Below are positions 5,497 through 59,443 of a stretch of DNA of 64,000 nt, in pieces. Made by a program: the position numbers and the translations under genes. Source of the stretch: Setoptus koraiensis. Its lineage: Eukaryota; Animalia; Arthropoda. The notes below the pieces were generated by a model. It saw nothing but the letters and a program-made list of their open reading frames with translations. It made no database searches and was not told where the DNA came from. The stretch lies in the NCBI GenBank assembly GCA_048013815.1, contig CM106586.1:23808001-23872000 (forward strand), in the 5' to 3' direction. Position 1 is the stretch's first letter. Each line of letters opens with the position of its first letter.

Positions 5497-6447
5497 ATGT
5501 CCAGTACGAAACGATACTTTTTGGAAGATGATGGTAAGGATGGTCAGTCATTTAGGCCGGGAGAAATAAGTCAAGAGCTACGTTTTGCATTGGGGATAGC
5601 ACCCGATAAATTGCCCATATGGATATATAGAATGAGAGCCCTTGGTTATCCACCTGGCTGGCTGAAGAAAGCTCAAGTGTCCTCGTTGAACATGTTTGAT
5701 TCGGACCAAAAGGACGGAACGTCAAATGGATCCAACAAGAGGCGTCATCCGGATTTAGACGAGGGTGAAATTGTCGACGAGACAGCCGAATATGATCATT
5801 CGAGCTTAATCGTATACCCAGGCTTCAACGCCCCCATGCCCGAAGGTGTGATTGATTGTCATTACTACCTGGGTATGCCCTCCATGATGGCTCACCAGCA
5901 ATTAGATTATGCAAAAATTCATCTCAAAACTCCCAAACCTTTACCAAAGTCAAAGCGTCTGAGGACTTCTGAAGTGTCTGACGAGTCCTTCGAAACACTA
6001 GAGACCACTACCGACACTTCCAACAAGCCCACAACCTCAGATTCCCCTAGCTCACCTGATAGCCCTACCAGGATGCCATCGTGTTCGGCCAGCACGCCCT
6101 CCCATGATACAATCAAAATAGACGAAGCAACAACCCCTTCTGGTATATTGAAGAAGATTTCCGAGAGTCACCCCATGCCCAATAACCCCAAGAAGCCCGA
6201 TTTGGAGAAATTTTCCGAGGGCATGAGTGATTTGATATATTTCAACAATTTGCCAAATTACACGGGTATTTTTGATAGAGTAAGAAAAGTACTGAATGAT
6301 GCGCGAAATAAAACACCAGAAAAACAAAGACAGGATACGCCTAAAGTTAGCACCCCATCAGAAACAAGCGCAAATAATGAAATAACTACTATTACTATAG
6401 ATGATGATAGTCATAACGATGATAACGACGATGTTATTATGATATAA
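5497..6447 (+). CDS. ZCCHC8: ZCCHC8-like NEXT complex scaffold, single exon, 316 aa; PSP domain and C-terminal motif, no zinc knuckle
   Basis: PSP motif FRPGEISQELRFALG...IYRMRALGYPPGWLK and C-terminal PDLEKFSEGMSDLIYFNNLPNYTGIFDRVRKVL. In-frame TAA at 5464-5466 upstream of the ATG. Confidence 0.82.
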   Translation: MSSTKRYFLEDDGKDGQSFRPGEISQELRFALGIAPDKLPIWIYRMRALGYPPGWLKKAQVSSLNMFDSDQKDGTSNGSNKRRHPDLDEGEIVDETAEYDHSSLIVYPGFNAPMPEGVIDCHYYLGMPSMMAHQQLDYAKIHLKTPKPLPKSKRLRTSEVSDESFETLETTTDTSNKPTTSDSPSSPDSPTRMPSCSASTPSHDTIKIDEATTPSGILKKISESHPMPNNPKKPDLEKFSEGMSDLIYFNNLPNYTGIFDRVRKVLNDARNKTPEKQRQDTPKVSTPSETSANNEITTITIDDDSHNDDNDDVIMI

Positions 6448-40832: not shown

Positions 40833-43645
40833 CGTTGGCCCGTTGCAACCGCGCCGGAATCCGATTCGAAAGCCGATTCGCGTCCGTCCGACACACGTGA
40901 GGCGCACCAGCGACTCCTCCTACGGCGGCGCCATCTAGCCATCGAGCGCCGCCGGTTGGTGCGGTCCGTCGGTGCAGTGTGGGCCAGCGCTCACAAGTTG
41001 CGAGTCGGCCGTGGTTGCGAGAGCCGCCAACATCGGCGTTGCCCAAAACAAAACAGCAACGCCAACAACCAAACGACCGCCGCCAAACAACTGCAACAAG
41101 CAAACTGCGACGACCAGACCGAAGAGCGAAAATTTGAATTTGAATTTGAATAATCCGATAGGTGGTAACAGCGACGTATGCGCGCGTATGCGTGTCCGCT
41201 CGACACCGACAACAACAACGGCAACAACAACGACAGCACCAACAGCAACAACAACGACAACAACAATGCAAATGCAAATTGCCCATGCCACATCGGAGCG
41301 CACCGCGGCCACGCCAACGTGCCCGACATGCGGGCCTAAGCGACCGAGCCAGTGATACACTTTGGTGGCGACAGGTGTGCCCGCGATAGGCCGCACCGCG
41401 CCAAATATCAAGGCCACAAGTGGAGGCACGGCAAACTGTCCCCAAAAGTGATTTATATTTTTATAGGCCCGCCGGCGGTGGCCGTTTTGGCCCGCTCTGG
41501 CCCGTAGTGCCGTGTTTCGGCCCATTTTGTCATTGTGCCACCGTCACAGGCGATGTTGTGCCACTTTGCCGCTGTCGCAAGCCAACTTTGTTGCAACTCG
41601 CAACAACGGCTCGCAAAGCCAGTAAAGAGTTTGAGAGATAAATGTAAATGGTCACAATTGACTTGTTACGAGCAGGAAATTGAATCATCGTGCGCGTCGC
41701 GGCGCGTATGTCGCCGCTCGCTTACATAATGTCACATAATGTCACACAATAAATCTTGGCTACTGGCGCCATCGCTGTTATACATGGGCCAAGATTTAAA
41801 GCAAAAGTAACTGGAGTGAGTGGCGACAAATCATGGCCGCCAAGCGGGCCCATTTGGCACACAACAAACTGGCGCTGTCCTGGCCGAAAGGCGCACTTAT
41901 TGGGCAGGCGGGCCCATTTAGCGAAATCGCTCCCTTCGGCTCCCGTCGGCTCTTGTCGGCGCTCCTCGGCGCTGCCCGGCTCCCGTCGGCTTTCCACGGC
42001 TTTAGTTGGGGACACTGATTTGCGCCAGCTGATAATTCTTGCCAGCCAGCGACAGTTTCCAGTTTAAATCATTATGATGCAAGCGAGCGAAAAGCGCCAC
42101 TGACACCCACAACTCGTTATGGCATTGTTGTGCCTGTCGCAAGCGACACCGGCAACGGCCACTGCAGAGGCGGCCCCCAAAAGAGGCGAACAGAAGAAGA
42201 AAAGGTTGGCCCGAGAATGCAACAATTCATTGGCCAGAGACGGGGCACACAGAGCGGGCGAGGGGGCGAGAAGGAGCACGGCAAGTAGAGGGCCGACACA
42301 GATGACAAGATGATATATTCGAATCGATTTATCTCTTATCTTTATACACGCGCTCTCTTTGTATCGCTGGTGTTGTTGTGTCGCTGTTGTTGTTGTTGTG
42401 TCGTTGTTGTTGTCGGTGTGTCGCTCGTTTGTTCTCCGTTGTCGCTCTCTCAAGTCAAGAGAGCAACAACAGCAACAACAACAGCAGCGGCAGCAGCAGC
42501 AGATAAACAGAGTGCAGATAAATAGACGAATGGAATTGATAGATGCGCTTTGATTATGTAACACAGTGTCGCCGTTGTTGTTGTTGTTGCTGCTGTTGCG
42601 CAGGCCAGCAGTGGTGCGGTATGGCAACATAAATCGCGACTTAATCGCGCGCCAAAGCTATATATACTGCAATTGTGATAAACTATGGTGCTGACAAGGA
42701 TGGCGTTGCAACAAAAACACTTTGTTTGCAACCAAAACACAACACACACGCACACGCACGCACTCGCTGGCTATGTCGTGGTGGCGACCGAGACACGACA
42801 CACGCACACGTACACGCACGCCGACAGCAGCGGAACAGGCATAGGTCAAACGCAGCTGGCTCGCTTCAATTAGTGCAGCACGCGCTGCACTGACAAACTG
42901 TGCCAATCGGGCACAGTTTCTGCAAAGTCTCTCTCTCTCTCTCTGTGTGACAGCGACTGTCCTCTGGCTTTGACATTGTCAAATTGACACTGGGCAAGGC
43001 GGCACGGCACGGCGCAACCGGCCAGCAAGCCGGCACAGGCGCGCACAGTTTTGCGCTGGTGATTATGTGAGATAATGATAATGAATAAATGCGTTGCGTG
43101 CGCAAGACACTAGATACAGGCGGCCAACAAACGGCCAGCGAATAGATGGAGTAGAAACGGGCGAGTGATTGATGCCCGGCGATGCCAAGTGCCGGCCATT
43201 GTGTGTCACATGGCCGGCGCAACTACACAGATTATGCTATATGTCAACATAGAGCATTTGTTATCTCTGACATACGCTTAACTGTGTGTGTCCGTATCTG
43301 TGATGCAACACTGCCGTTGTTGTGTAACATCCGTAACAACGGCAACAACAACAGCAACAGCAGCGACAACGACGGCGACAACGACACGGCACAGCCACCC
43401 ACTACTGCAGTGTTAATGGTGGCGCTGCGAGGGACGCGCAACTGCAACGACCGGACACGGGACAAGCGGCGAGCGGCGAGCGGGCCAGAGGGCGGCCGAT
43501 ATAAAATAGTAATTTATTGCCATTGGTCAAGCTGTCTATATGTCCATAAACTAGTTGACCGCTGGTAATAACTAACTGTAACTGTCACTGTTGTGGCCGC
43601 TGGCGCTGTTGTGTTATTACGGCATTAACATTGAAACTATTTTAT

Positions 43646-43671
43646 CAACTCGACCGCTGGCGGTCGAGTTG
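43646..43671. other. Perfect palindrome, 12 bp arms and 2 nt spacer
   Basis: CAACTCGACCGC-TG-GCGGTCGAGTTG. Confidence 0.95.
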
Positions 43672-44443
43672 TAAATGGGCGCCGTCATCATGGCGATGGC
43701 ACGGTTGTTGTTGTTGTTGCGGTATGGCACACAAAGCGGTTGGTGGCACAACGCGCCGGCGCCCATCGCTGCGGCCGGGGTGATTTATTTACATCGGATT
43801 GACTCCATCTAAACATTGATTTGTTGCGGCCTAATGGCCGATGGGCACTTTTGCCACACTTGCACATAATCTAGCAATAAATATCTCTCGTGTGTGTGTG
43901 TGGCGATAATTTATTTATTCTGTCGACGCTCGCAGTTGTTGTTATTGTTTTTTAATCTTGATTGTTCTAATTGATTGCGGTTGATTGATGCCGGCGCTGA
44001 TTATTTTCAGCAATTGACATTTCTGCTGCTTGCACTGACATCATTATCATTTGCATGCGACTTTTCCACCGGCCAATTGCTTAATTATGCCTGGCCGGCC
44101 ATTGGTGTTAATTGACCGGTGACCGTCGACCGGTGCGCCGACAGCCACGACACAATTAGACAGCGTGGCTGCGTTCGTTTGGCAGCTCGGATATTGAGAC
44201 AACAGTGTCAATTGACACCTTGGGCTATCGCGTCGCACCGCCGCCAACAACAACAATAAAAGGCTAGATTGTGCACGGCGATAACGCTGAAGGGATTAAC
44301 CCATCGATCATTGGCCGAGCGCCTATTCGGGCGTCCAATTGAGCCCGTGGCTGCGCCACGTCCACTGCATTATATCCAGCGCGTATATCCACTGCATTAT
44401 ATGCACTACATTATATCCACAACAGTAGAGCGGTATAGAGCGC

Positions 44444-44568
44444 GTGAATCGGTCCGTGAGTGAATCGGTCCGCGAGTGAATCGGTCCGCGAGTGAATCGG
44501 TCCATGAATGAATCGGCAATTGGCAATCGGCAATGAGCAATCGGCAATGGGCAATCGGCAATGGGCAA
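44444..44568 (+). repeat. 4 x 16 bp (GTGAATCGGTCCGCGA) followed by 8 x 7 bp (TCGGCAA/TGGGCAA)
   Basis: Read directly from the sequence. Confidence 0.9.
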
Positions 44569-44607
44569 TATAGGACAGATGGATCGCTTGCACGCGATTA
44601 GCCACTT

Positions 44608-44676
44608 TGATTGACAGCTGACTGACAGCCACTCCATCCTATATTGGCCGCTGGGCGTGCAATCAGCTGTCAATCA
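44608..44676. promoter_or_regulatory. Inverted pair of TGATTGACAGCTGA elements (two Exd/Hth decamers), candidate Dfd 3' enhancer
   Basis: 44608-44621 and 44663-44676 are exact reverse complements; an extra TGACAG lies between them. Confidence 0.55.
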
Positions 44677-45374
44677 GCGCACGTCACTGCTACCGTGCGT
44701 TTATAGGCCCGCACGCACTCTTTGCACACGTACATGCAGTGCGTATTGGCAACTGTCGAACTAGCCCGTGTGTTAGATAAGAGAAAAAGTTCGACGCTCA
44801 CTGATTGGCTGCTTAACAGCATAGACGGCCGTTGCAGCACTCACGAGAGTGCGTGTGTTTGCGCAAAAGGGTGCGTTGCGTGCCGCTGCCGACCAGCACT
44901 GGAAAGCGCGTTAATTTGTGCAATTTGTGCATTTATATGCGTGTACAAATATGCGTGTATATGTATGCGTGAGGCAAAATGTTATCTGGTGCGCGCGCGT
45001 CGCCACGGCGAGATGGCCGCAGCTTGATTGATCTAGATGTGTCTAGACGAGATGTGTCCGTAGCAATGTTTGCGCCGGCCCGACATGTCGCGGCGCGGAC
45101 GAGAGAGCGGACGAGCGAGCGAACGGCGACCGGCTCAATATAGGGCACTACGAGCACAGCGTTGCTGTTTTGCATTGGCTTCGGCTTCAGACTCGGCTTC
45201 AGATTCGGCTGCTCCAGTTGGCGCAGTTGGCCAGATGCATTCTGCTGGCGATGAAAAGAAGGAAAAGGGAGGAGAAGAAGCGCACAAAATAAGAAACAAG
45301 AGCAGTGGATATAAAACAAGTGCAAGTATAAAAGAAAGGCGCACACATCGCATGATTGTTGGCGTTGTTGCCGT

Positions 45375-45406
<32 letters not shown>

Positions 45407-45644
45407 TTCGCGACGCTGTGTCCTCTAATTCCGAGCTGCCTTATTCACGTCCCGAGTGCGCACATAATTCGACGTTCGACGTTCCTTCGATGATCAACTC
45501 GGCAGGCCGGTCAGCGCATGCAGCATCCAGCTCTAAGCGACAGGGCGGATTCTCGCTATTGATGCGCGTTGCGAGCTGCCAGCTTGCGATACACGCTACA
45601 CAGCGACGGACGCGCCAGCGACAGAGCGGCCGACGGGCCGGCGA

Positions 45645-45741
45645 GAGAGCGACCGACGAGCCAGAGAGCGACCGACGAGCCAGAGAGCGACCGACGAGCC
45701 AGAGAGCGACCGACGAGCCAGAGAGAGCGACAGACGAGCCA
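45645..45741 (+). repeat. 5 x 19 bp tandem repeat (GAGAGCGACCGACGAGCCA)
   Basis: Four exact units and one variant unit. Confidence 0.92.
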
Positions 45742-46318
45742 GCGAGAGCGAGAAAGAGAGCGAGAGGTTGTGAGAAGAATTCGACAACACGAACAACAGC
45801 GACAGCGCCAACAACGACAACAACGGCAACAACGGCAACAACAACAACAACAACTGCACCAACCAGAATCATTAATCATGTGCGTGCGCAAGTCTATGAC
45901 AGGACTAGGTTTTGTTGTAGCCGTTGTTGCTGGTGATGCCGGCGCTGGCGCTTCTTCCATGGCTGGCCCTGTCGCTGTGTGTGTGTCTCTGTTGTGTCGG
46001 GCATGAAGCTGGCCGGCGCGTCTGGCCTGTGCCGGGCTCGCTATCGGCTTCGACATCGGCGCTGGTGTTCGGCTTCGGCGCTTCCAATTCGCCACTACAA
46101 GTTGGCCAACTGCAACGACGAGCGCTGCAACGACGAGCGCTGCAACGCCGACAGCCGCCACCAGAGCACTGGACGAGTGCACAGCGGCGAGAAGACGCCC
46201 GAGCGGCCGCATCCAACGGCGACCGGCGAACCCGACCGGCAGCGCATAGAAGCGCACAGAAGCGCATAGATCGGCCGAGAGGACAGCTGAGAGCAATGTG
46301 TCAAAATGCAGATACACA

Positions 46319-47267
46319 CAGCGAATTCCAATCAGCGACCAGCGCCGGCGCTGGCCGCCGAATTGTCAATAATTGGCCAGCGCTAATCAATACCATGACA
46401 CTCATATTGGCCGCACTATGCACTATGACCGCCACAATAAAATATTGTTGTTGTGCCGTGCGGGCATTGTAGCCAATTTTGCGCCGTCGCTCGATTGTGT
46501 CGCCGTTCGGTTGTGTCGCCGTTCGGTTGTGTCGCCGATCGGCCGTCCATTCACTCGCTATATTGTGGCCGCTGCTGCCGGCCACAATATAACGGTCACT
46601 GCTAATCAATATTTGCCTTTGTTTTAGCTGTGCTTGCTTTGGCGTTGACATGCATCACTGTCAGCGCCAAAGTCACTGGTCGGCGGCCAGTGGTCAGTGG
46701 TGGCTGGCCAGCGGACCGGCGGCACCGTGCCAGCCGGTGAACAAGACACGGCCAACGGTGACAGCGGCCAAGGGCGGCAAATGACAACAGTTGTGGCGGC
46801 GGCACGCAAATTAACGACGATCAAATCAAATCTACCCTCACAAGCCACACAATTGTCAGCCCAGCGAACGTGCCCAATCGGACAGGTAAGGCGGCGGCCG
46901 AAGCGTGCGCGTCCCGTCGGCGCGCTACGGCCAGACGACGAGCGAGACCCGATTGATCGATCACTCGATCCATCAAAATTTGTCCGCTGGCTGGCTGGTT
47001 GATTAGCGCCCGTCGCGCGAACGCAGCGCCGGCCGGTCGGCGGGCGCGTGTTGCTTTCGGTGGCAACACAAATCGTCACTGTCCGCCGATCGCCCAAATA
47101 CCCGCCGCCGAATGTGTGCCCAACGAGCGCACGTAAACAAACAGCAGCGGATATAAACAAGCCGCAAGCGAGCGCGCCAGAAATGGCCAAATTCGGGCTC
47201 AAATGAAGCTGTTGGTGGTCGCACCCAAGCCTCATCGGTCATCATTAGGCCACGTGAATTGTGACAG
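46319..47267 (-). repeat. Left arm of a long inverted repeat (3' of Dfd)
   Basis: Its reverse complement aligns with 55243-55982. Positions 46930-47077 are identical to 55419-55566 (148 bp). Confidence 0.95.
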
Positions 47268-47299
47268 CTCTGTGTGTTATTAATATTAATATTTGTGCG

Positions 47300-47305
47300 T
47301 TTATT
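47300..47305 (-). terminator. Candidate Dfd polyadenylation signal AATAAA
   Basis: First AATAAA I found on the - strand after the Dfd stop, ~370 nt downstream. Confidence 0.5.
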
Positions 47306-47310
47306 TATAG

Positions 47311-47347
<37 letters not shown>

Positions 47348-47567
47348 GGGTGCTGCTGCTACTGTCTCGACCCTGTCGCTGTCACTGCTGTCTCTACTGT
47401 CATAGTCAGCTGATAACCTTAACATTTGTATCAGCTGTGTGCATTTGGGGCCGACAACATTTGTGAGAAATGAGACACACAAACACGCAGACAATCAGCT
47501 GTGCTGTGATGTGAGACCAATATCAATATCAATACATAAAGTGTAAGTATCAGAGTGTTTACATGTG

Positions 47568-47598
<31 letters not shown>

Positions 47599-47678
47599 CG
47601 TTGTGAATATTATTAAATTTAATGTGATGACAATGACAATGACAATGATGACAATAATGACAATGATTACGATGATGA

Positions 47679-50600
47679 TCAATTGGCGCTGGAAAAAAGC
47701 TGTTGCGTTTGTGTATTTATTGCCTGTTGATGGTTGCTGTTTGCTGCTTGTCTCCCGGCCCCATTACTGTGATGAGTATTATTAGTGTTGGTGTTGTTAG
47801 TTGTGTTGTTGTGATTGCTTATTGAATTATTACTAGTTGTGGTGGTGGTTGTTGTGCCGGTGGTGCTGTTAGTGTCGCAAACGTTGCCGATATGCTGAAC
47901 GGCGCCCACGGGGGAGATAGTTGTTGTTGTTGTTGCGAGCTCGTTGGCCGCTTTAGCTGTCGCTGTCGTAATAGTAGTGATTTTTGGTTCCTGTTTTATG
48001 CTAACTGCATTTGTGTTGTTGTTGTTTGTGTTATTGTTGTTGTTGTTGTTGTTGCTATTTGAGTTGTTGTTGTTTTGATTTTGGGGCTTCTTTTTAACAT
48101 TTTTAGTATTGGGCAAATTGTTGTCTTTTTTGTATTTCATGCGCCTATTCTGGAACCAAATCTTAATCTGTCTTTCGCTTAATGCCAAATTGTGCGCTAT
48201 CTCAATCCGTCTGCGTCGTGTTAAATATTTATTAAATAGAAACTCTTTCTCTAATTCAACTATCTGATAACGAGTGTAGGCCGTCCTCTGGCGCTTCTGG
48301 TCCGCCGCCGACAGTCCGCCGTTGATGGAATTGCCCACTGTCGATCGATGCCAATCAACGATTGCGATTTGTGATTTGCGATTTGCGATTTTTGATTTGC
48401 ATGACCGATGCGCCCGTTCCATGGGCCGTTGATAGAGACGCAATATGCGACCATGATTTATTTGCGCCAATTTATAATGCGATTCAAGTGGCATTATGCG
48501 TAGGCCAACAGGTTTGTCGAGAATGGACGGCACGCCATTTATAAGCATTTATATTCATATTCATTATTCACCATTAGACAAACATGGCGACCCAATGAGC
48601 AGCAATATTTATTATGCAAATTGTTGTGGTATGGCGTGCAATGAGATGATGGAGAGATAAGAGAGTATAAGTATTCATTAGTTATTTAGTTTATTATTTC
48701 AATTTTAGTCAATTTGATTTGTAGTGTTTACAGTATCGAGCTGACACATGAGGCGCTCAGCTGATAGCTTGAGTGTTTCAGAGCAAATTGCTGCCGAATG
48801 ATTGAGCGGTATTTATATTATTTATATTGTGTGTATATTACACTTTTATTTATCTGGCCGGCGATTGCTATATAATGAGATAATATATTGCCATCACTAT
48901 ATTGCTATATAGTGTGTTGGCAGTGAAAAGTGAGCCAATAAATCAGCCTGTTTCGTGTCTGACACTCATTGGCTATCGCGGGCTGCAGCTCGCTAATTAA
49001 GTTACACAATTATTGCATTATTAATGTTTGTTGGATTGTCCTCAAGTGGCACTCACACTTGATTTGCTTGCTAATTGTCGCGCATCGACAATTGACAACA
49101 AAAACACAACAAAAAGTTTTAGTCGAGTTGCCCACATGACACAAGCCTTGCATGTCATTCTGGCTTCTTTGTTTGTTGTTTGTTGCATTACGCCACAAAC
49201 AGTGTGTCGCAATCACAACAACAACAACAACAACAACAGCACTCTAACAAGACCGATCGACACGATAATTGGCGCCCGTTTGATTGCGTCACTCTTTGCA
49301 CTGACAGTGTCGTTTTCACCTGACACACAACGCACACAGCGTCACACTGTCGTGAGCGAGGCAGACGTTGCAATTACGCAACAATATCGGCTAATAGAAC
49401 AACAAGTATCGTCAGTGTCATTTGGCCACTTGAGTGCTGATTGAGTGCGCCAGTGAGACTGCGACGGTCTCACAGTTCGATGAAGATGTCAGCCATGATT
49501 ACAGCGTTGCCAGCTGACTAACAAATTGTAAATTGCGTTGTTGTTAGTGTCAAGTGTCACACAAATTACGACACAAACAGCTGATGCAGCGAACCTTTCT
49601 CAGCTCGCCAATCATCTGACTATGACAACAACCGACACTGACAACTACTGACGCCGCCAACAACTGACACTGACAGCGACACACACACACACGCCTATAT
49701 CCGGTCTGGCCAGCGGCGACAGTCGAGCCGAGTGTGTCGCCGGTCTTCCCGTCGCCGCGGCCCTATATAGGCCACACACTGGTCGCTGGCCTTGCGACCG
49801 CTGCCCGTCGGGCAGCTCGGCTGCGCCACAGCTAGCACACGTCAAACACGACGGGCCGGCATCAAAAGATGCGCGCCACACACACACACCCACAACTGTC
49901 ACATCCTCGAGCCTCGGCCCGTCGCTTCCGAAGAGTGCGCCGCACTAACGCTGTTGCCCGGCTCGCTGTTCCGCGCGGACTGTTTGCGGGATGTTTGCGG
50001 AGTGTGTCGGCGTGGCTGCGACCAGACTAGTAGTTCCACAATCAGTCCGCAAACAGTCCGCGAACGGTCCGCAAACAGCCCGCAACGAGTCCGCGCTGTG
50101 CCCGCAGCCAGCGGACAATATAGGACAGCAGCGAGTGCGTTCGCCCGTGGGCCTGCCAGTGGAGCGCGCGCTGGGTTGTGTGCGGCCGCGCCGTGGCGCA
50201 CAATTGCGTATCGGTTGCGTATTCACGAGCGCAGTTTTGCGTGGCCATCGGGCCGTCGGGCCAACGAACGAGCGCGCCTTCTCTGGCCAGCCCTGCGCCC
50301 GTTTCCGCGACTGATTCATCCCTGCGAGTGACTGTGCGAAACCACAACACACACACACTCGATTGTTGTTGGCCAGTCGGGCCGGTTGAGCCGGAGCTGA
50401 GTGGAGCGGAGCGGCGCGGCGAGAGTCGGCACTGTAATTGTTTATTTGCAGCGGCTGGCGAGTCGCCGGCGAGCAGCGCACGACAGTTGAGCTGCTTGCG
50501 TCTCGGGCCGGGCTGCGGTCGCATGCGAAACTGAAATTGGCAGTGCGCAATTGGCGCTGCGAGATTCACGCCATGAAATTCGCCGATTCGCCGATTCGCA

Positions 50601-53600
50601 GCCGAGCTACGAGGCCGTTGCCGTAATGCGCGGAGATGCGAGCCAATCGGCGGCTTGGTCGCTGCTCAATGCCAACAACAGCCCAGCGCTCGGTCGTGTT
50701 GCGTCGCCTCCTTTCGGCGGCTACATCGCGGCTCGCAGCCATTGATTCGCTTGCCTTCGGTGGCGTTCGCTGCGTTTGCCGATTCGCTGGCGTTCGCTGC
50801 GTTCGCCGATTCGCTGGCGGCCGCCGCTCGGCTCGCGTCGGGCGCACACTGGCGCAGGTTCGCCACTTTCGTTAGTCGGCTCGGCGGCTGGGCGGGTGTG
50901 TGCCGCTCAATTGTTGTTGTTGCGGGCGTCTGACGGCCGTCGATCCGCGCTGTTGTCTCGCCAGACAGCAGCGCTTGTGGCGCAACCGACGGGCCGGCTG
51001 GCGAGCCGAGCGAGCGCGTGAGCCGAGCAAGCGGGCGAGCAGGCCGAAAGAGCGAGCGCAAGAGCGAGCGCAAGAGCGAGCGAACGAGCGAGCGAGCGAG
51101 CAAGCGAGGAAAATGGCAAAAATTGGCATTGGCTGTGTCGCTATTTTTGCCTGCAGCTCATGCCATTTTGTTGTTGCGTCGGCCCGACTCGCGAGCTACA
51201 CGTCGGCTGGCTGCGAGCGGCCGACAGCGACAAGCCAGCCAACGAGCGCCGCCAACGAGCGCCAGCCAATGAGCGGGCGAGAGCGCCGCCGCCAGCCAAT
51301 GAGCGAGCCGAGCGCCGAGCGCCAGTTGAGCGCTGGCGCTAGTTGAGTGAGTTCGCTCGCTCGCCTGCGAATTCGCTGCAATTTCGCCGCAATTTCGCTC
51401 TCGTCTGGCGGGCTCGCAACACAATTCGCACAACACAATTCAGCGAGCGCGCCTGTGAAGCGATGGTGAGGAAATATTCACGCAAATGTTGACGCACGCA
51501 GTGTGTGTGTGTGTGTACGTCGTCATCTGTTGTTGTTGCGACAGCCAAAAGCTGGCAACAACTCTGTTAGTCGCTGCTTCTCTCGCTCGCTCGTTGCGTC
51601 GCCCTCTCGTTGTGCTCGCAACGCTGTCAGCCTGTTCGCTGGCTCGAGCGAACGCCATTCTATTCTCACGTATGCACACTGTCGTTGCTGTTGCTGTTGT
51701 TGCCGTTGTTGCTGTTGTTGTTGTTGCTGTTGTTGTTGCTGCTGTTGTTGTTGGTGCTGTCGCTGTTGTTGTTGCCGCTGCGAGCGCTGCTGCTGGCAGC
51801 AACACAAACACACAGTTGGCTGCCGATAGTGATGCAATAGACGACGCATCGGCCGCCCGCTCGCCTGTCTGTTTGTTTGTCGCCGTTGAAGTTTGCTCAG
51901 CGGCATCAACGACATCGCCAACAACGACACCGCCAACAACGACAGCGCCGACAACAGCGACGCCAGCGCGCCAGCGACACATCGCAGCCGCTCCAAGATG
52001 CGGCTTTATAGACACGGCGGCAATTATAGGCCGCCATCGGCGCAGCCCCCCAGCTACGCGCTGTGCGTGTGTGTGCGTGTGTGCGCTGGCCAACTCTCTT
52101 GCCGGCGCGTTTGTGATCGTCGCGGTCGCACAATTCGGCCGAATTTTCGAACTCGACCGAATATCCGAATTCGACCGAATATCCGAACTCGACCGAATAT
52201 CCGAGTTCGACCGAATATCCGAACTCGACCGAACATCAGAACTCGACCGAATATCCGAACTCGACAGCCGACAAGACGGGCGGCGCGCCCGAACGCCCAT
52301 CGAGCGCCCGAACGCTCGCATGCCCAAACATTCGCGCAGTCGAGCGCTGCGACCGTTCGCCGTTGCAACGTTCGCCGGTTCGTCTGCCCGAGCCGCGGAC
52401 GAGCCGCGCTCCGTTCTTTATAATGCGAACCGCCCCGCTGTACAGGCGGCACGGGCGGCACCAATGGCAACAATGGCGCGCTGCTGAGCTGCCGCAACCG
52501 CGCCAAGAAGCGAGTGCGGCCCCCAGTGCGGCCGGCGCGGCGCGGCCCGCCGCGACGGGGGCCGCACTGCGGATTGCGAGCTGCGAACCGCGGACTGCGA
52601 ACCGCGGACTGCAAACTGCCGACTGCGGGCCGAGCGCACAAGTCGGGCTGTGATACTGGCAGCGGCGAAATATGATGACTTGTTTGGGCTGGCGGGGGCA
52701 AGCAGCATCGGCGCGCAGTTTCACTCGAGGCACCGGCGCGCAGTTTTACGAGAAGCCGAGGGTCGGCCCTGAGCGGCACAGTGCAGAGTTGAGAGTTGCG
52801 AGCGGCGAGGGGGCACCAACGGCACACAAAAACAACGGGCCGGCCAGCAAACAACAAAGTCAAACAAACAAGAATTATGATAAATAGCTGGCTGCGTCAG
52901 TGTCCACTGCGGGTCGCTGTCAGCGGCACTCAAGGTGAGTTATCGCGGCAACAATCGCGACGGCAGCCACGGCACAACGAAGCGACATTTGAATATTATT
53001 CGGCGGTCGCTTGTTCGGCGGTCGCCGGGTTCGCGGCCAATTGCGAGACGTGCCAGCGCCGAGCAGAGAATTAGCCCGGTCTTACAACTCGCTGCTGGAG
53101 CGAACAAGTCGAAGAGAAGTGGCCCGTTGTTGGCCACTTTTTAGGCACAAAGGCGCAAGTTGTCACATTGTTGCTGGCCACTCACGCTGCCAGAATGCGC
53201 CAAAAAATAGCCAAAAAGTTGGCCACAAATCTCGCACCGTCGTCCGGCTCAACCGACGGGACGGGCCGGCCCGCAGCGATTTCGGCGGTGCGGCGATTTC
53301 GGCCCGACTCCAGATTGAATTTTCCAAATTTTCTAAATTTTCTCGATTTTCCCGACACTCCAACGCGGCGGCCTATAGATGCGGCCCGCAGAACAGCATG
53401 CTATACCGGCAGAGTGACACAGTGCTGTCAATGTGGCACTGAATGGACCAGCACGGATTGCATAACACACACAATAATACGTATGCGTACATGCAACGGG
53501 GGATCGGAATGATAAATATGGTGCGCTCGTCACCTCACCACTTAACTCGAAAGCGCCACCGATTGTCAGAGCACGGGTGAATAGCGCACCGTGACACGCT

Positions 53601-56600
53601 ATAATATTTATAATATGCGCACCAATGCGCTGTGGATATCGCTCAACAGATTGTGGATACTATATCCTGAATACTATATGGGGATATCCACGATGAACAG
53701 CGTCATGGCATTAAGGCATTACAGCATTATGGCATTATGGCGTGGATATCTCCAGTGGCATGGATATCTCTGGCGGCGCGGATATCGTGGATATCGCCGT
53801 AGCAAGTAGCAAGTAGCAAGGATGGAGCAGTGCTTTAGGATATCTGTGCGCCAGCGATAGGCCGCACGGATATCCTAAAGCACAGATATCGTAAAGCACA
53901 GATATCGGCGCGTCGACATGGCAGGCGCGTGAATCACGTGTAAATAGGTCAGGTTACGCCAGTGACAGCCAGTGAGTCGGCAACGCGATCGATTGCGTCA
54001 CTGCATTGCACTTTAACAGCGGCACACAGGGGGCGCCTACAAATGGGGCCCCTCTGGCGGCGGCCGCTGTTAGTGCAAGGCGCATAAAGTGGTTTAATAA
54101 ATCAATTCCGCACCAGATACGACAATCGCGTATAAATAACACGCTCGTTTGTTCTCGTGTCTGCTGGCTCGTTCTTTGCCCGCCGTCGTGTCTGTAGCCG
54201 CGGCTGTGTGACGTTACAACTTGACACAAGCACCAACAACAGCACCAACAACAGCAACAACAGCAGCAACAGCAGCAACAGCAACAACAACAACAGCAAC
54301 AACAACAACAGCAACAACAACAACTTGCCAGAACAACTTGTGCTCAGGCAACAACAGTAAGTGTGTTCACGAGGGCGAAAACACACACACAATCACGCAC
54401 AAATTGTGCGAGCGGCAGCCCATGCATAACACAACACTGACACCCTTGAACGTCAAATTGTCGGATTGTCGGATTGTCGAAGGCGCTGCAAGTGTCGAAC
54501 GTTGGTCGCTGGATGGCTGGCTGAGTCGCAGCTCGCAGCTCGAAACTCGCGACTGCAACTGGCAACTTGTTTCCTTTCGAACGCTCACTGCGAACTCGCT
54601 GGCGAACCTGTTCGCCATTGTGTTCGGGCGAGGCTGGCGCAGCGCTCATTAGCACACACATTTGGCACATTTGGCACATTTTTAGCGCAACAGTGCTAAG
54701 TAAAAACTGCATTTAGCTGGTCGCGCCGCCATGCCAATGCCTGGCCGGCTCATTCACTGGCTGGCGGGCCGGCTCACTCGCGGCTGGCTGCTCGGCTCAC
54801 TTGCGGCTGGCTCACAACTTGTCGGTCGGTCGCGGGCCGGCTCGTGTGAACCAACGAAACTAGCCCAAGGCAGCGCATTTCACAAAAAGCATATTTCACA
54901 CAGTGATTTTGCCAGTGTTTCTGTGCTCCCTCGCAGCGCTCTCCCATGCCTTACATGCACGCAATGGCACCACTTGTTTGGCGTGATTCGTGCCCTCAAC
55001 GGTGCGCTGTTTGTGGCCGACATGTCGCGTATCGCTCACTGACGAACCCAATTCAACCGACCAACTACCAAACGACAAGAGCGTTACATAACAGCGACAC
55101 TTTTTGTTTCTAGGTGTCGCCACTGGTGGGCTCTGACTGGTAGCATCTACGACATGGCCATGTGAGATAAGATGGAGAAAGTTGCACAACAGTTGAGGCG
55201 CAATGCACAGCCCAGCGGGCTCGCATCACCGGGCCACGTACCTGTCACAATTGGCGCGCCCTAATGATGACCGATGAGGCTTGGGTGCGACCACCAACAG
55301 CTTCATTCGAGCCCCAATTCGGGCTCGCTTGCGGCCTGTTCATGCCCGCTGCTGTTTGTTTACGTGCGCTTGTTGGGCGCACATTCGGCGGCGGGTATTT
55401 GGGCGATCGGCGGACAGCGACGATTTGTGTTGCCACCGAAAGCAACACGCGCCCGCCGACCGGCCGGCGCTGCGTTCGCGCGACGGGCGCTAATCAACCA
55501 GCCAGCCAGCGGACAAATTTTGATGGATCGAGTGATCGATCAATCGGGTCTCGCTCGTCGTCTGGCTGTTGCGCGCCGACGGGACGCGCACGCTTTGCCC
55601 GCCGCCTCACCTGTCCGCTCGTTCGCTTGGCCGACAATTGTGTGGCTTGTGAGGGTAGATTTGATTTGATCGCCGTTAATTTGCGTGCCGTTAATTTGCA
55701 CACAACTGTTGTGGAGCGGCGTCATTTGCCGCCATTCAGCGCTGTCACCGTCATGTTGGCCACTGGCCGCTGACCACTGACTGTTGGCGTTGACAGTGAT
55801 GCATGTCGACGCCAAAGCAAGCGCAGCCAAAACAAAGCCAAATATTGATTAGCAGCGACCGTTATATTGTGAGCGGCAGCAGCAATGAATGGACGGCACC
55901 AAATCGCCAGCAAGCGGCCAATAAAAATGTCATGCTATTGATTAGCGATTGACAATTATCGGCGCTCGCTTTCGAATCGCTGCGGCCAGTTGTGTCCAGT
56001 TGTCGCTCGTTGTCGCTCGCTGACGTTTGTTGATGAGTCGATGGTCGTCGATTGTCGATCGCCAGTTGGCATATTCCACAACAATCCGGCGGGCGCATTG
56101 TGAGCGGGCGATAATTTGCCTGTTGTTTGATTTGTCGTTCTTGTCGTGGCCGTGGACAGGAAATGAGACTTTCGCGTCGTTCGCATTTCGTTTGCACGCC
56201 GCCTGCCGGTGTCCGTCGTGTCAACGGGTTTGCGCCGGAGTCGGCCCGACGACGACGACGACAACAAAAATAAAAACAACAACAACGACAACAACGACAA
56301 CAACAAGTGTCGTTATAGGGCCGCGTTGTGTTGCGTAACTGCGCTGTGTTGCGCACTGTTACACTGGCGCGTACATGCGCGCCAGGGTCGGCCAAAAAGT
56401 GACCGGCGGCCGTCGATTGTTGGTTGCAAGGTTGCTCACTGCACGGCCTCGTGTCTCCCCAGACAGACAGACAAACAAAGAACAGCGAGAGAACGAGAGA
56501 ACAAAGAACCGAACAACTGGCTGCCTATATAGGGCACAAAAGCACACACACACACACAACGTGATTGACAGCTCCACTGACAGCGGGTGATTGATGAGCG

Positions 56601-59443
56601 GCGCGCTAACGTCACTCTGAGCTGCGCTGGCCTATAATTTTCATTAATAATCTTGTCCGATAATTTTCATTTTGTCACGATGTTGCCAAACTGAATCTCG
56701 CTACATGTTTTGTCGTGTGATTCGCACATCGCGCAACACAAGTCATGTGATCAGCTGCTCGTCGGCATAGCCGCCGCGATGGCTGCTTCATCCACGGCTC
56801 GTCTCGTCTCTAATTGGCGCCCTCTTTGCGTCGCGATTGAATTCGCAGCAAGCTAATTCGCAGTCTAGTTGCGGCCAACATCCACACAGACAGTGTGGCT
56901 CGCAAAATCACAACATAACAACAAAAAACAGTAGCTCGCCGGCCAGTGCAGCCCATGGGGCCAGCTCATGCGGAAACATGCGGCTGGCAGTGGAAAAAAG
57001 TTGCAAAAAACGACGCACACACACAGTTCAACTAGTGGATTGTTGTGCATCTCTGGCACAGTGTTGCGGCACAGAGCATCACTGTTCGCGTTCGTGAAGT
57101 GATTATTCTCTCATGGCAAGCATGAATTGAATCTGTTGTTTCAAACAGATTTCAAACAATTTTCAGCGCTGCCAAACCTCGGCTCGTTGTGCCCTTTTGC
57201 TGCCAATTTCAATGGCAAAATGGCAACAAATTTGAATATTAGAGAAATTTCTTTGCATTTCACAAGCGTCTCGACAGAGCGCCTTTCGAATGGCTGATCC
57301 ATTGTGCGCGATTGTTTTTCTCAACAACAACACGCTTATCAGCTAGCGGTTGCTACGAGAAAGAAACTGCAACCGGCTTATTGGCGCATGAGGATAATCT
57401 CTGACGAGCTCCACGACGATTGCCTGTGTCGTGTTGAGGCTCGGCACCGACAATTATCAGCCATTATTAGTTATTATTATTAGTTGGTCTAACAATAATC
57501 AAGCCGGCGATTATCGGCACGCTGCAATGATAGCCTGAGTATGAGATTTGTTGGGACACAGTGTTTACGAGGAAAATAAGCAAAAACAAATAGGAGGATT
57601 TCTCACCTTGTGACGAATGCTTCTTTTGCATCCAGTCATAAACAACTCCCCCTTGCTCTTCGCCGCTCAACTCCGATCCACTGTGCGAATCATCGTCGTC
57701 ATCGTCGTCTTGGTATTCGTCGGCCGAATGATGCTGCAGTTGTGGCTCTTGTGTGTTGTGAAGGAGTTGTTGTTGTTGTGTTGCTTGTTGTTGTGCTTGT
57801 GTCTGTGGTTGCTGGTGTATCTGCTTCAATTGTTCCGCTTCTAACGACACCGACGACGACGATGGCGAGCTGGCTACCAATTGTGCGAGCGGGTGCTGTG
57901 GTTGCTGATGAATTAATTGCTGATATTGATATTGCGGTTGTTGTTGTTGGTGTAAGTGACTGGCTTGTTGATGTTGGTGCTGCTGTTGTTGTTGTTGTTG
58001 AGATTGTTGCTGCAACTGCATCTGCTGCAATTGTTGCTGCATCTGATGCTGCTGCTGCTGTTGTTGTTGATCGGCCTCTAGTGACACCGACGACGACGAG
58101 GGCGAATGTTGCGTAAGAGGATGCTGCTGCGGCTGCTGGTGACCTTGTAGGGGTGCCAGAGTTGGCGGCGTCGATATAGGTAGGATCCTCAAATTGGTGC
58201 CGGCGGCATGCAGACTGTCCGCTGCTGAGGCGCCGAAATTGCTGCTGGCGCTGCTATTATTAGACTTGTTGCCATTTGTGACAGGCTGCAAAGTTTGGGG
58301 CGACTGGTGATTTGGTGGCGTTCCGTTTGCTGGCGACGCGGCTATTGCGCCCATTGACGTGGGCACCACCGGCACGCCGGCAGCAGCAGTAGCAGCTATC
58401 GGCAACAATATAGGACTATCGGCACAGGTAGCCGGTTGTGCAATACCGTTCATGATGGGATGCTGATGATGATGCTGAAAGTGTTGCTCATAATGTTGGT
58501 GTTGCTGATGGTGATGTTGTTGCTGTTGTTGCAGGTGGTGGTGGTGGTGGTGGTGAAGTTGTTGTTGTGGTTGATGCTGCTGATTATGTAAATGCTGCTG
58601 CTGTTGTTGTTGTTGTTGCGAATGCTGTTGGTGATGGTGCTGCTGAAAAGCAGCCGCATTCTGATGATGGTGATGGTGTTGTGCATGTTGCGCGTGGTGC
58701 TGGTGGTGAAGGTGGTGATGGTGGTGAGCGTGCGGCATCAAAATCATGGCATGATGCTGCTGCTGTTGCTGTTGTTCAATATTGGTTAGATCGGCTGAAT
58801 TAAGCAAATGATGATGATGTTTGTTGTCCGCTAGCGGTGATTGATTGCTGGCCAGCACTTGTTGTTGTTGCTGCTGCCGCTGCTGCTGAGTGAATTGCTC
58901 CTGATGTAAATCAAGCTGTTGGTGTTGGAGGTGATGAAGCTGCTGCTGCTGCTGCTGTTGTTGTTGGTGGTGGTGGTTTTGATGCTGCTGGTGCTGATGG
59001 TGTTGTTGATGGTGGTGCAATTGATGGGGTGCTTGGTGATGCTGTTGTTGTTGTTGTAATTGTTGTTGCTGCTGTTGTTGTTGTTGATGCTGAAAGTGTT
59101 GCTGATAAGTGTGATGATGCTGTTGATGACTCTGAATTGTGACCGGCGTGATGTTTGCTGTGAGTGTTGGCGTCGATTGGGGACTCACTGCGCTCGCCAG
59201 CATGGTGGCATCGCCCGCGCCTAAACTGACCGGCGACTGATGGTGATAATTGTGAGGTAGGCTCCCATTTGTGATTGGACTAGCCGAGTGATTGAAATGA
59301 TGATGATGATTATTGTTGTAGTTGACCCTAGATTGAGTGGCCACAGTGACCGCTGCGCTTGCTGCTGCCGCCGTCATTGCCGATTGTTCATTATGCGACA
59401 CAACAGGATATGATAGATAATCGGTGGCGTTCTCTGTCTTCAT
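47679..59443 (-). CDS. Dfd: Hox4/Deformed-type homeodomain protein, ~831 aa; exons 59443-57607 and 48337-47679, intron 9,269 bp
   Basis: Homeodomain at 48299-48120: [60 protein letters not shown], followed by the Hox4-diagnostic LPNTKNVKK. Exon 1 is Q/H-rich and ends [13 protein letters not shown]|GTGAGA. The phase-1 acceptor cag|TG restores the frame. Confidence 0.85.
52148..52265 (+). repeat. 6.5 x 18 bp tandem repeat (CGAACTCGACCGAATATC)
   Basis: Units start at 52148, 52166, 52184, 52202, 52220, 52238 and 52256. Confidence 0.93.
55243..55982 (+). repeat. Right arm of the long inverted repeat (inside the Dfd intron)
   Basis: See the left arm. Contains TGATGGAT (55521) and TGATCGAT (55533). 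Confidence 0.95.
56562..56595 (+). promoter_or_regulatory. Composite TALE/Hox element in the Dfd intron: TGATTGACAG + TGACAG + TGATTGAT
   Basis: Exact motifs at 56562, 56578 and 56588. Binding is inferred. Confidence 0.55.

What the first reader, a model, noticed from the sequence alone, without database searches (positions are those of the whole stretch)
46319..55982. Long inverted repeat brackets the Dfd homeobox exon: possible DNA-inversion or RNA-pairing switch on a Hox gene
The arms (~950 and ~740 bp) enclose a 7,975 bp spacer that contains the 3' splice site, the whole homeobox exon and the predicted 3' UTR. One arm is intronic and the other is just beyond the gene end. A 148 bp core is perfectly identical while the flanks have many substitutions and indels, which suggests ongoing gene conversion or selection on pairing. 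A 13 bp indel breaks the shared frames, so the arms are non-coding. The core holds Pbx/Hox-type TGATGGAT and TGATCGAT. Hypotheses: (1) recombination between arms flips the homeobox exon and uncouples it from exon 1 (ON/OFF allele or somatic switch); (2) read-through nascent RNA folds into a long stem that loops out the exon and affects splicing, 3'-end formation, editing or siRNA production; (3) a duplicated autoregulatory enhancer that pairs to loop the gene.
Basis: partly seen in the sequence, partly recalled or inferred. Interest (0 to 1): 0.85.

Follow-up and report, generated by a model that had tools for sequence, protein, structure and literature searches.

The report
Two-copy inverted repeat around Dfd homeobox exon
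A real, two-copy inverted duplication of non-coding DNA brackets the homeobox exon of a gall mite's Deformed gene; copying between the two arms keeps them alike, and they most likely act as a duplicated pair of regulatory modules, not as a DNA-flipping switch.

Summary
Arm A (46333-47267) and arm B (55242-55990) are inverted copies, about 91% alike, with a perfect 148-nt core (46930-47077 = 55419-55566). They enclose 7,974 nt holding the 3' splice site, the homeobox exon and the short 3' UTR of a minus-strand Dfd/Hox4 gene.

The arms are non-coding. They match no RNA or protein family and have no third copy in the window. In an independent deep run the shared part has about twice the depth of single-copy flanks, so this is a two-copy repeat, not a genome-wide transposon. 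One independent contig crosses arm A in the reference orientation, but it passes through the shared tract, so it does not prove phase.

In that other strain the arms are identical over 323 nt. The tract mixes the window's arm-A and arm-B letters and carries a 6-nt insertion that neither window arm has. [quoted passage not shown] All Hox/Exd-like and Hth/Meis-like motifs of arm A lie in these islands.

Best reading: a duplicated Dfd regulatory module evolving in concert. The inversion-switch idea has no support, and an RNA stem would need read-through. The scan earlier noted another conversion-homogenised palindrome and many inverted duplications in this genome.

The parts
46333..47267 (+). Arm A of the inverted repeat. 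It lies downstream of the Dfd stop codon and just past the predicted poly(A) site. It is about 155 nt longer than arm B because of an insertion with a 16-nt tandem repeat (46491-46542).
   Evidence: independent contigs
55242..55990 (-). Arm B of the inverted repeat, inside the 9.3-kb Dfd intron, about 1.6 kb downstream of the exon 1 donor.
   Evidence: arm-B-type contigs in X1 and X5
46930..47077 (.). Perfectly identical 148-nt core in arm A, equal to 55419-55566 in arm B. In another strain the identical tract is 323 nt (46800-47116).
55419..55566 (.). The same perfect core in arm B.
   Evidence: ungapped register of pair I1
47679..48337 (-). Homeobox exon of a Dfd/Hox4-type gene (homeodomain Pfam E=5e-22). 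The acceptor AG is at 48339-48338 and the stop codon at 47679-47681.
57606..59443 (-). Dfd exon 1, Q/H-rich, ending in the hexapeptide-like YDWM. The donor is CAAG|GTGAGA.
48338..57605 (-). Dfd intron of 9,268 nt, which holds arm B. It sits between the hexapeptide and the homeodomain.
47300..47305 (-). The only AATAAA on the gene strand between the stop codon and 45500. The predicted cleavage site is about 10-30 nt before arm A.
46583..46665 (.). Island conserved in organism C (3 substitutions and 3 one-nt gaps in 83). Its first 49 nt are identical in organism D. It holds TGATGCAT flanked by TGACA/TGACAG and a 14-15-bp local hairpin.
46952..46992 (.). Island conserved in organism C, holding the palindromic TGATCGATCA and TGATGGAT (Hox/Exd-type sites).
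47195..47268 (.). Island of 74 nt identical between the window's arm A and organism C. It holds TAATGA, CACGTG and TGACAG. Organism C's contig ends exactly at the inner boundary of the arm.
46362..46411 (.). Outer island conserved in organism C (6 differences in 50).
46754..46787 (.). Weaker island conserved in organism C (5 differences in 34), holding TGACAG.

Best explanation
A roughly 0.75-0.95-kb piece of non-coding Dfd regulatory DNA exists as two inverted copies. One lies in the long intron and the other lies immediately 3' of the gene. Shown: it is a two-copy repeat, not a transposon family. It is non-coding. The arms exchange sequence by intrachromosomal gene conversion, which makes the perfect core and makes its extent differ between strains. 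A second species carries a colinear element with short, strongly conserved islands. Inferred: the islands are transcription-factor binding clusters (Hox/Exd-type TGATNNAT, Hth/Meis-type TGACAG, TAATGA). On that reading the two arms work as a redundant pair of Hox/TALE-responsive, probably auto- or cross-regulatory, enhancers of Dfd, placed as Hox4-class enhancers are in flies (intron). The inverted arrangement would be a by-product of the fold-back type of duplication that other scan notes report often in this genome. It would not be a device that flips or loops out the homeobox exon.
For: The repeat and its core are verified. Copy number: in run X5 the single-copy flank contigs have word depth 150-225, while the 323-nt contig shared by both arms (46800-47116, bounded exactly by the arm A/B divergence points) has 314. 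There is no third copy in the 64 kb. Gene conversion: the shared X5 contig carries window arm-B letters at 46862, 46898 and 47078. It carries arm-A letters at 46817, 46858, 46878, 46888, 46900, 46926, 46929 and the 6-nt indel. It also has a 6-nt insertion absent from both window arms. The flanks differ by about 1 letter in about 2,900. Non-coding: frame-breaking indels, flat codon-position counts, and no Pfam or Rfam match. Conservation: organism C's 691-nt contig is colinear with 46583-47268, with four islands and inter-island gaps of nearly the same length (88/89, 164/168, 202/204). The last island is 74/74 identical. Organism D keeps 49/49 nt. Motifs: TGATNNAT occurs 4 times per arm against 0.7-0.9 expected from surrounding non-coding DNA (P about 0.01), and TGACAG 3 times against about 1. 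All of them, and the TAATGA, fall in the conserved islands, which cover about 30% of arm A. Precedent: the Drosophila Dfd intron holds a neural autoregulatory enhancer with [T/A]GATNNATNN Hox-Exd sites bound by Dfd-Exd-Hth (PMC4678145). Eriophyoid genomes are TE-poor (1.54% in Aculops lycopersici) and intron-poor, and their retained long introns are thought to be rich in cis-regulatory sequence (PMC7738191).
Against: No functional or chromatin data exist, so the enhancer reading rests on conservation and on short degenerate motifs chosen after seeing the sequence. The enrichments are modest. I could not obtain organism C's locus, so I cannot show that its copies are inverted, number two, or flank the homeobox exon. 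Its arm contigs have depth 79-83, against 29.6 for the adjoining flank contig and 8-13 for unrelated contigs, which is more than twofold, and coverage may be uneven. More distant relatives' Dfd loci (L001-L007) show no arm homology, no inverted repeat and none of the islands. Contig depth is only a rough guide to copy number.
Confidence: 0.55

Rival explanations
1. Neutral relic. A chance fold-back or inverted duplication copied a piece of intron or 3' flank. Gene conversion alone keeps the copies alike. At most one copy, the original, has any function, and the arrangement around the homeobox exon has no meaning.
For: Other scan notes report many inverted duplications in this genome, and one other small palindrome with a conversion-homogenised core (unchecked AI notes). 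Most of the perfect core is not conserved between species, so conversion rather than constraint explains it. Distant relatives lack the arms.
Against: Both arms keep all the cross-species islands at 85-100%. In a streamlined genome with tiny intergenic regions (PMC7738191), useless DNA is expected to be deleted. Organism C's contig ends coincide with the arm boundaries, which suggests the duplication predates the species split.
Confidence: 0.2
2. RNA stem. Transcripts that read past the poly(A) site contain arm B (intron) and arm A. These pair into a long double-stranded stem that loops out the homeobox exon and affects splicing or 3'-end formation, yields circular or edited RNA, or feeds small-RNA production. 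Inverted repeats flanking mouse Sry, which drive circular transcripts, would be the analogue (from memory).
For: The two inner arms can form about 435 intermolecular pairs at -937 kcal/mol, against about -385 with a shuffled arm. In run X1 a contig covering 45866-47303 has depth 17.3, against 1.3-5.8 further downstream and 128 in the 3' UTR. If X1 is RNA, this means some read-through across arm A.
Against: X1's kind is unknown, and uneven DNA coverage would give the same picture. No run known to be RNA was found to hold the stretch. The only AATAAA lies just before arm A. The homeobox exon is a terminal exon with no downstream donor, so back-splicing is not expected. No A>G excess was seen in the arms. 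The local hairpin at 46636-46673 shows no compensatory change between the arms.
Confidence: 0.1
3. Paired boundary or tethering elements. The two like sequences pair in chromatin, as fly insulators such as homie and nhomie do at eve (from memory), and loop the homeobox exon and 3' end. This is the 'pairs to loop the gene' part of the reader's third hypothesis.
For: There are two near-identical elements in a Hox locus with conserved islands. The conserved island holds an ATCGAT-type palindrome (GATCGATC, found nowhere else in the about 36 kb of surrounding non-coding DNA).
Against: There are no contact or binding data. The motif resemblance is from memory and weak. The loop would enclose only half of a transcription unit, which no known boundary pair does.
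Confidence: 0.07
4. DNA-inversion switch. Crossing-over between the arms flips the homeobox exon and turns Dfd off, either as alleles in the population or somatically.
For: The arms clearly recombine (conversion), and the identical tract of 148-323 nt is long enough for homologous exchange. In human Y palindromes, conversion is accompanied by rare inversions (PMC3723533).
Against: Only the reference orientation is seen: the assembly, one X1 contig across arm A, and no strand-changing joints. Inversion would destroy an essential Hox gene. No recombinase gene or site is present. In the Y palindrome, inversions are about 20-fold rarer than conversions.
Confidence: 0.03
5. Two copies of a dispersed transposon, or an assembly artefact.
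For: None found beyond the repeat itself.
Against: The depth is about twofold in X5, and independent contigs from other samples reproduce both arms and their junctions. There are no terminal repeats, coding capacity or family match, and no third copy in the window. The clade is TE-poor.
Confidence: 0.02

Closest known systems
Sex-chromosome palindromes with arm-to-arm gene conversion (e.g. human Y palindrome P6; PMC3723533)
   Same: Both have inverted arms separated by a unique spacer. The arms are homogenised by non-reciprocal exchange, the conversion state varies between lineages, and conversion far outweighs inversion.
   Different: These arms are about 100-fold shorter (0.75-0.95 kb against about 110 kb) and only about 91% alike outside the core. 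They are non-coding, whereas Y arms carry genes. Here the important sequence, an essential exon, lies in the spacer. No GC bias is visible in the few converted sites.
Drosophila Deformed intronic neural autoregulatory enhancer (NAE; PMC4678145, citing Lou et al. 1995)
   Same: Both are non-coding elements in the intron between hexapeptide and homeobox of Dfd, with several [T/A]GATNNAT Hox-Exd composite sites and Hth input.
   Different: There is no detectable sequence homology. No function has been tested here. The mite element is duplicated in inverted orientation 3' of the gene, which is not described for the fly enhancer.
Redundant ('shadow') enhancers arising by local duplication (general concept, from memory)
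   Same: Both involve two similar modules near one developmental gene that are expected to drive overlapping expression.
   Different: Shadow enhancers usually share binding-site content but not alignable sequence. Here the copies are alignable and evolve in concert.
Mouse Sry flanked by long inverted repeats that promote circular transcripts (from memory: Capel 1993, Dubin 1995)
   Same: In both, an inverted repeat brackets the DNA-binding-domain exon of a developmental transcription factor, and pairing in a long precursor RNA is possible.
   Different: The Sry arms are many kilobases long and lie within a known long transcript. Here one arm lies past the predicted poly(A) site, and no circular or read-through RNA is shown.
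Other inverted duplications noted in this genome by the scan (s1-314233, s1-333808, s1-303156 and others)
   Same: They are of the same size class (about 0.5-1 kb), inverted and non-coding, and in one case have a conversion-homogenised core.
   Different: Those are mostly tight head-to-head promoter duplications with short spacers. This one has an 8-kb spacer enclosing an exon and shows cross-species conserved islands.

Membership tests
Palindrome / inverted repeat evolving by arm-to-arm gene conversion | Exactly two inverted copies separated by a unique spacer | tested here: met
   Searches show two arms and no third copy in the window. In X5 the shared contig has depth 314 against 150-225 for single-copy contigs. 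Depth is only a rough measure.
Palindrome / inverted repeat evolving by arm-to-arm gene conversion | Non-random tract of identity between the arms | tested here: met
   The perfect run is 148 nt, with P=0.0011 to <5e-5 under random placement of the differences.
Palindrome / inverted repeat evolving by arm-to-arm gene conversion | Paralogous variants exchanged between arms in some lineages (polymorphic conversion) | tested here: met
   In X5 and X1, arm A carries the window's arm-B letters at 46862, 46898 and 47078. In X5 both arms collapse into one 323-nt contig at about double depth. The flanks are nearly identical.
Palindrome / inverted repeat evolving by arm-to-arm gene conversion | Arms more alike within a species than orthologous arms are between species | tested here: inconclusive
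   Organism C's element is under 80% alike outside four islands, while its own contig ends at the arm boundaries as a collapsed repeat would. Its copy number, orientation and location could not be seen.
Hox/Exd/Hth-responsive (auto)regulatory enhancer | Cluster of Hox-Exd composite sites and Hth/Meis sites | tested here: met
   TGATNNAT occurs 4 times per arm against 0.7-0.9 expected, and TGACAG 3 times against about 1. The enrichment is modest and the motifs were chosen post hoc.
Hox/Exd/Hth-responsive (auto)regulatory enhancer | Binding sites conserved between species | tested here: met
   All TGATNNAT, TGACAG and TAATGA sites of arm A lie in the islands shared with organism C, which cover about 30% of the arm.
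Hox/Exd/Hth-responsive (auto)regulatory enhancer | Drives Dfd-dependent expression; bound by Dfd/Exd/Hth | not testable with these tools
   This needs reporter, EMSA, ChIP or ATAC experiments.
Site-specific or homology-driven DNA inversion switch | Both orientations of the spacer occur | tested here: inconclusive
   Only the reference orientation was seen: the assembly, the X1 contig 45866-47303, and no strand-change joints. Short-word contigs cannot phase a repeat of 148-323 nt, so rare inversions are not excluded.
Site-specific or homology-driven DNA inversion switch | Dedicated recombinase or recombination sites | tested here: not met
   No Pfam domain was found in any ORF of the arms or spacer.
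Transposable element (including foldback/MITE) | Multiple dispersed copies; terminal repeats, target-site duplication or transposase | tested here: not met
   The depth is about twofold only. There is no coding capacity or family match, and the outer ends are fuzzy and decayed.
Exon-flanking inverted repeats driving RNA circularisation or hairpin RNA | Both arms lie in one transcript | tested here: inconclusive
   The AATAAA lies before arm A. The X1 depth pattern hints at read-through, but the kind of run is unknown.
Known structured RNA or microRNA | Match to an Rfam family | tested here: not met
   There were no gathering-level hits in the window. The arm gave only a sub-threshold mir-4875 hit at 23.6 bits against 90.

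The most novel reading that the evidence does not exclude
The inverted repeat is older than the split between at least two mite species and is kept because the arms must match each other. They would pair either as an RNA stem in read-through pre-mRNA or as chromatin elements, and this pairing would control the use of the Dfd homeobox exon (splicing, 3'-end choice, a homeodomain-less or circular product, or a gene loop). Gene conversion would be the means by which the match is kept. This would be a Hox gene whose DNA-binding exon is regulated by a conserved, concertedly evolving palindrome.
Probability: 0.1. Interest if true: 0.8.

Novelty: new member of a known kind. Interest (0 to 1): 0.38.

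Why it matters
The case shows a small inverted duplication with polymorphic arm-to-arm gene conversion that carries conserved non-coding islands around a Hox exon. It sits in one of the most streamlined animal genomes, where spare DNA is rarely kept. If the arms are enhancers, the locus shows directly how a redundant enhancer pair is born and then evolves in concert. It also marks candidate Dfd control elements in a lineage with a radically reduced body plan and a scattered Hox complement. The repeat could also cause rare loss-of-function inversions of Dfd. The mechanism itself, duplication followed by gene conversion, is ordinary.

Tried and rejected
1. Transposon or multi-copy repeat: rejected on depth, absence of coding capacity and absence of a third copy.

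2. Coding arms: rejected.

3. Known RNA or Hox microRNA: nothing at gathering level in the whole window, and only a sub-threshold hit in the arm. The 74-nt invariant island does not fold better than shuffles (z about -0.15). The hairpin at 46636-46673 (segment z=-4.4) shows no compensatory change between the arms.

4. Relatives. The homeobox-exon search found only distant eriophyoid-type Dfd genes: P0042, P0025 and P0061. Their loci L001-L007 are about 74% alike in the homeobox. They have no arm homology, no inverted repeat and none of the islands at up to 2 mismatches per 18-mer.

5. Two exact-pattern scans of metagenome contigs with conserved island sequences were blank.

6. Exact look-ups of five window ORFs (the homeobox exon ORF, three others from the arms and their flanks, and the neighbouring protease) found nothing on record. 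Contigs of other strains and species therefore could not be fetched.

7. The search for RNA runs returned only runs of unknown kind.

8. A cryptic donor-like CAG|GTACGT at arm B's inner edge and CAG|GTRAGG inside the arms were considered as alternative-exon signals. I dropped them because organism C does not keep them.

9. The homeobox itself was deliberately kept out of the reads tools.
Full report
**1. The observation**

The repeat finder finds one long inverted repeat in the window, and every other pair it reports is trinucleotide-type low complexity. blastn and MAFFT resolve the repeat into three blocks:
- 46800-47267 against 55690-55242, 91.2% over 468 columns;
- 46571-46693 against 55883-55760, 91%;
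- 46369-46414 against 55959-55914, 85%.

Recognisable similarity runs out near 46333 and 55990. Arm A is longer, mainly because of an insert that contains a 16-nt tandem repeat. The longest exact run is 148 nt (46930-47077 = 55419-55566). Random placement of the observed differences gives such a run with P=0.0011 in the inner block and P<5e-5 over the whole aligned arm. The spacer is 7,974 nt.

**2. The gene**

The 289-codon ORF 47679-48548 on the minus strand carries a homeodomain (Pfam E=5e-22). Its best named relatives are Hox4/Deformed proteins of spiders, mites and insects. Upstream on the same strand lies a Q/H-rich ORF (57467-59443) that ends in [13 protein letters not shown], followed by CAAG|GTGAGA. 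The acceptor ...GATCGACAG|TG at 48339-48338 joins in frame and gives ...[25 protein letters not shown]....

The intron is 57605-48338 (9,268 nt) and contains arm B. The only AATAAA on the gene strand between the stop codon and 45500 is at 47305-47300. Arm A (inner edge 47267) therefore starts some 10-30 nt beyond the predicted cleavage site. The layout 'one arm intronic, the other just beyond the gene end' is confirmed.

Other notes of this scan call the genome an eriophyoid gall mite. I did not verify the taxon. The homeodomain does share unusual residues ([15 protein letters not shown]) with three unnamed relatives from metagenome and Logan contigs.

**3. Not coding, not a known RNA, not a transposon**

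- The arms differ by indels of 13, 29, 6, 6 and 13 nt.
- Substitutions fall 6/10/8 on codon positions 1/2/3 of the longest arm ORF.
- No Pfam family matches any ORF of the arms or the spacer.
- Rfam gives nothing at gathering level in the window, and only a sub-threshold hit in arm A.
- There is no third copy in the 64 kb.

**4. Independent reads**

This was the only read-laying run allowed. I laid it on 43650-47650 and kept the homeobox out of it.

Run X5 behaves like deep whole-genome data.
- Six flank contigs with 0-1 differences in about 2,900 nt have word depths of 150-225.
- Where the arms differ, two contigs are seen, one arm-A-like and one arm-B-like: 150 and 202 at 46616-46631, and about 225 and 159 at 47117-47201.
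- Between 46800 and 47116 there is a single 323-nt contig of depth 314. Its ends coincide exactly with the first arm A/B differences on either side.

That is the signature of a two-copy repeat collapsed by a 31-mer assembler, not of a genome-wide family. The tool warns that depth is no exact copy number, so I treat the twofold figure as rough.

The shared X5 contig is a mosaic.
- It has the window's arm-B letters at 46862, 46898 and 47078.
- It has the window's arm-A state at 46817, 46858, the 6-nt indel, 46878, 46888, 46900, 46926 and 46929.
- It has a 6-nt insertion near 46902-46912 that neither window arm has.

In that strain the arms are identical over 323 nt, whereas in the window they differ there at ten substitutions and one indel, even though the flanks of the two strains are almost identical. 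New mutation cannot produce this, and exchange between the arms can. Gene conversion is therefore recent and polymorphic in the species. No GC bias is visible among these few sites.

Run X1 has the same arm-A variant on a 1,503-nt contig. That contig runs from the outer flank (45866) through arm A to the inner flank (47303) in the reference orientation. No strand-changing joints were reported in any run. A 31-mer contig that passes through a shared tract of 148-323 nt cannot prove phase, so rare inversions are not excluded.

**5. Other species**

Run X7 (organism C) has a 691-nt contig colinear with 46583-47268. Four islands pass the 80% threshold:
- 46583-46665;
- 46754-46787;
- 46952-46992;
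- 47195-47268, which has 0 differences in 74 nt.

The stretches between the islands are too diverged to lay, but their lengths are almost unchanged (88/89, 164/168, 202/204). The contig begins and ends where the window's arms stop being alike, and its last 30 nt overlap a 3-kb flank contig. Its depth is 83. A 1,977-nt contig that matches 46362-46411 has depth 79, and its preceding letters resemble arm B's outer flank. The flank contig has depth 29.6.

This pattern fits a repeat whose copies are identical within organism C. I could not see its copy number, orientation or position relative to the homeobox exon, and coverage may be uneven. Run X16 (organism D) keeps 46583-46631 with 49/49 identity.

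Most of the window's perfect core is not among the islands. Arm-to-arm identity there therefore reflects conversion, not constraint. The invariant islands, by contrast, reflect purifying selection.

**6. What the islands contain**

TGATNNAT (the Hox-Exd composite core) occurs four times per arm, against 0.7-0.9 expected from about 36 kb of surrounding non-coding DNA (P about 0.01). TGACAG (Hth/Meis) occurs three times, against about one expected.

In arm A, all of these sites and the one TAATGA lie inside the islands shared with organism C, which make up about 30% of the arm. One island reads TGACA-TGCATCA-CTGTCA, a Hox/Exd-like site between two Hth-like half-sites. The motifs are short and were chosen after I had seen the sequence, so I rate this as moderate support.

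The Drosophila Dfd intron holds a neural autoregulatory enhancer with such composite sites, bound cooperatively by Dfd-Exd-Hth (PMC4678145). In the eriophyoid Aculops lycopersici, transposons make up 1.54% of the genome and over 80% of genes lack introns. The authors suggest that the retained long introns are kept for their cis-regulatory content (PMC7738191).

**7. RNA pairing**

If one RNA held both arms, the inner 450-470 nt could form about 435 intermolecular pairs at -937 kcal/mol, against about -385 with a shuffled partner. Whether such an RNA exists is open.

X1's depth is 128 at 47356-47556 (3' UTR), 17.3 on the arm-A contig, 1.3-5.8 further downstream and 3.7 on an arm-B contig. That looks like RNA with partial read-through. 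But the kind of run is not on record, and no run known to be RNA holds the stretch. No editing-like A>G excess appears. The local hairpin in one island (segment z=-4.4) is not supported by compensatory change between the arms.

**8. Relatives further away**

The three eriophoid-type Dfd loci that I could fetch (L001-L007) are about 74% alike in the homeobox. They have no arm homology, no inverted repeat and none of the islands. One of them (P0042 on L001) encodes hexapeptide and homeodomain in one ORF, that is, without the intron. Their flanks are short, so this is weak evidence that the repeat is confined to a narrower group. Two metagenome pattern scans and five exact-protein look-ups were blank.

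**9. Context from the scan**

These are unchecked AI notes. This genome is said to hold many 0.5-0.6-kb inverted duplications, mostly at head-to-head promoters. It is also said to hold one other small palindrome whose core is homogenised by conversion. The scan has therefore met the same process before, on other DNA of this genome. That makes a general mutational origin (fold-back duplication) likely for the Dfd repeat as well.

**10. Verdict**

Shown:
- The repeat is real, inverted, non-coding and present in two copies.
- It brackets the Dfd homeobox exon.
- It is undergoing arm-to-arm gene conversion.
- It contains islands conserved in at least two other species.

Inferred:
- The islands are transcription-factor binding clusters.
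- The arms are a duplicated pair of Dfd regulatory modules.
- The inverted geometry is a by-product of how the duplication arose.

The flip-switch idea has no support and is biologically costly. The RNA-stem and chromatin-pairing ideas remain possible minority readings. The closest known kind is a palindrome evolving by gene conversion, as in human Y palindrome P6, where conversions outnumber inversions about 20-fold (PMC3723533). The mite repeat is much smaller, with non-coding arms and the important sequence in the spacer.

Noticed in passing
window 47950-48320 (-); P0042, P0061, P0025: The Dfd homeodomain is unusually diverged at normally invariant places ([19 protein letters not shown]; RRMKYKKDN instead of RRMKWKKDN). 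The W-to-Y/F change and the ADQKRQR / [17 protein letters not shown] flanks are shared with three unnamed relatives from metagenome and Logan contigs.
   Followed up: partly
window 57606-57650 (-): The hexapeptide reads YDWM instead of YPWM. The relative P0042 has FPWM.
   Followed up: no
L001:2233-2775: In one relative (P0042), the hexapeptide and homeodomain of Dfd lie in a single ORF. The intron that holds arm B here is therefore absent there, and the Dfd intron is variable within this group of mites.
   Followed up: partly
window 42000-58000: The non-coding DNA around Dfd is crowded with short tandem duplications of 7-30-nt units, 2-8 copies each: 84 TRF rows in 16 kb. Examples are 44440-44569, 45602-45751, 50756-50819 and 52135-52265.
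   Followed up: no
window 18900-46300: About 27 kb downstream of Dfd has no convincing ORF in an otherwise compact genome. No Hox microRNA or other Rfam family was found anywhere in the window.
   Followed up: partly
window 47356-47556: In run X1 a 270-nt contig over the Dfd 3' UTR has depth 128, against 1-6 in nearby intergenic DNA. The deep run X5 shows no laid contig at 47402-47650. This is unexplained; X1 may be RNA, or a filter may have removed X5 contigs.
   Followed up: no
window 60999-62723 (-), 17352-18899 (-), 3696-5195 (-), 5497-6447 (+): The neighbouring genes are an intronless AAA/peptidase-M41 (FtsH-like) protease 1.5 kb upstream of Dfd exon 1, a PL48/FAM65-like gene, GLE1 and a PSP-domain gene. 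None is a Hox gene.
   Followed up: partly
window 46556-46591: Arm A alone carries a small perfect-stem palindrome (ATATTGTGGCCG...CGGCCACAATAT) where arm B has a shorter, non-palindromic version.
   Followed up: no
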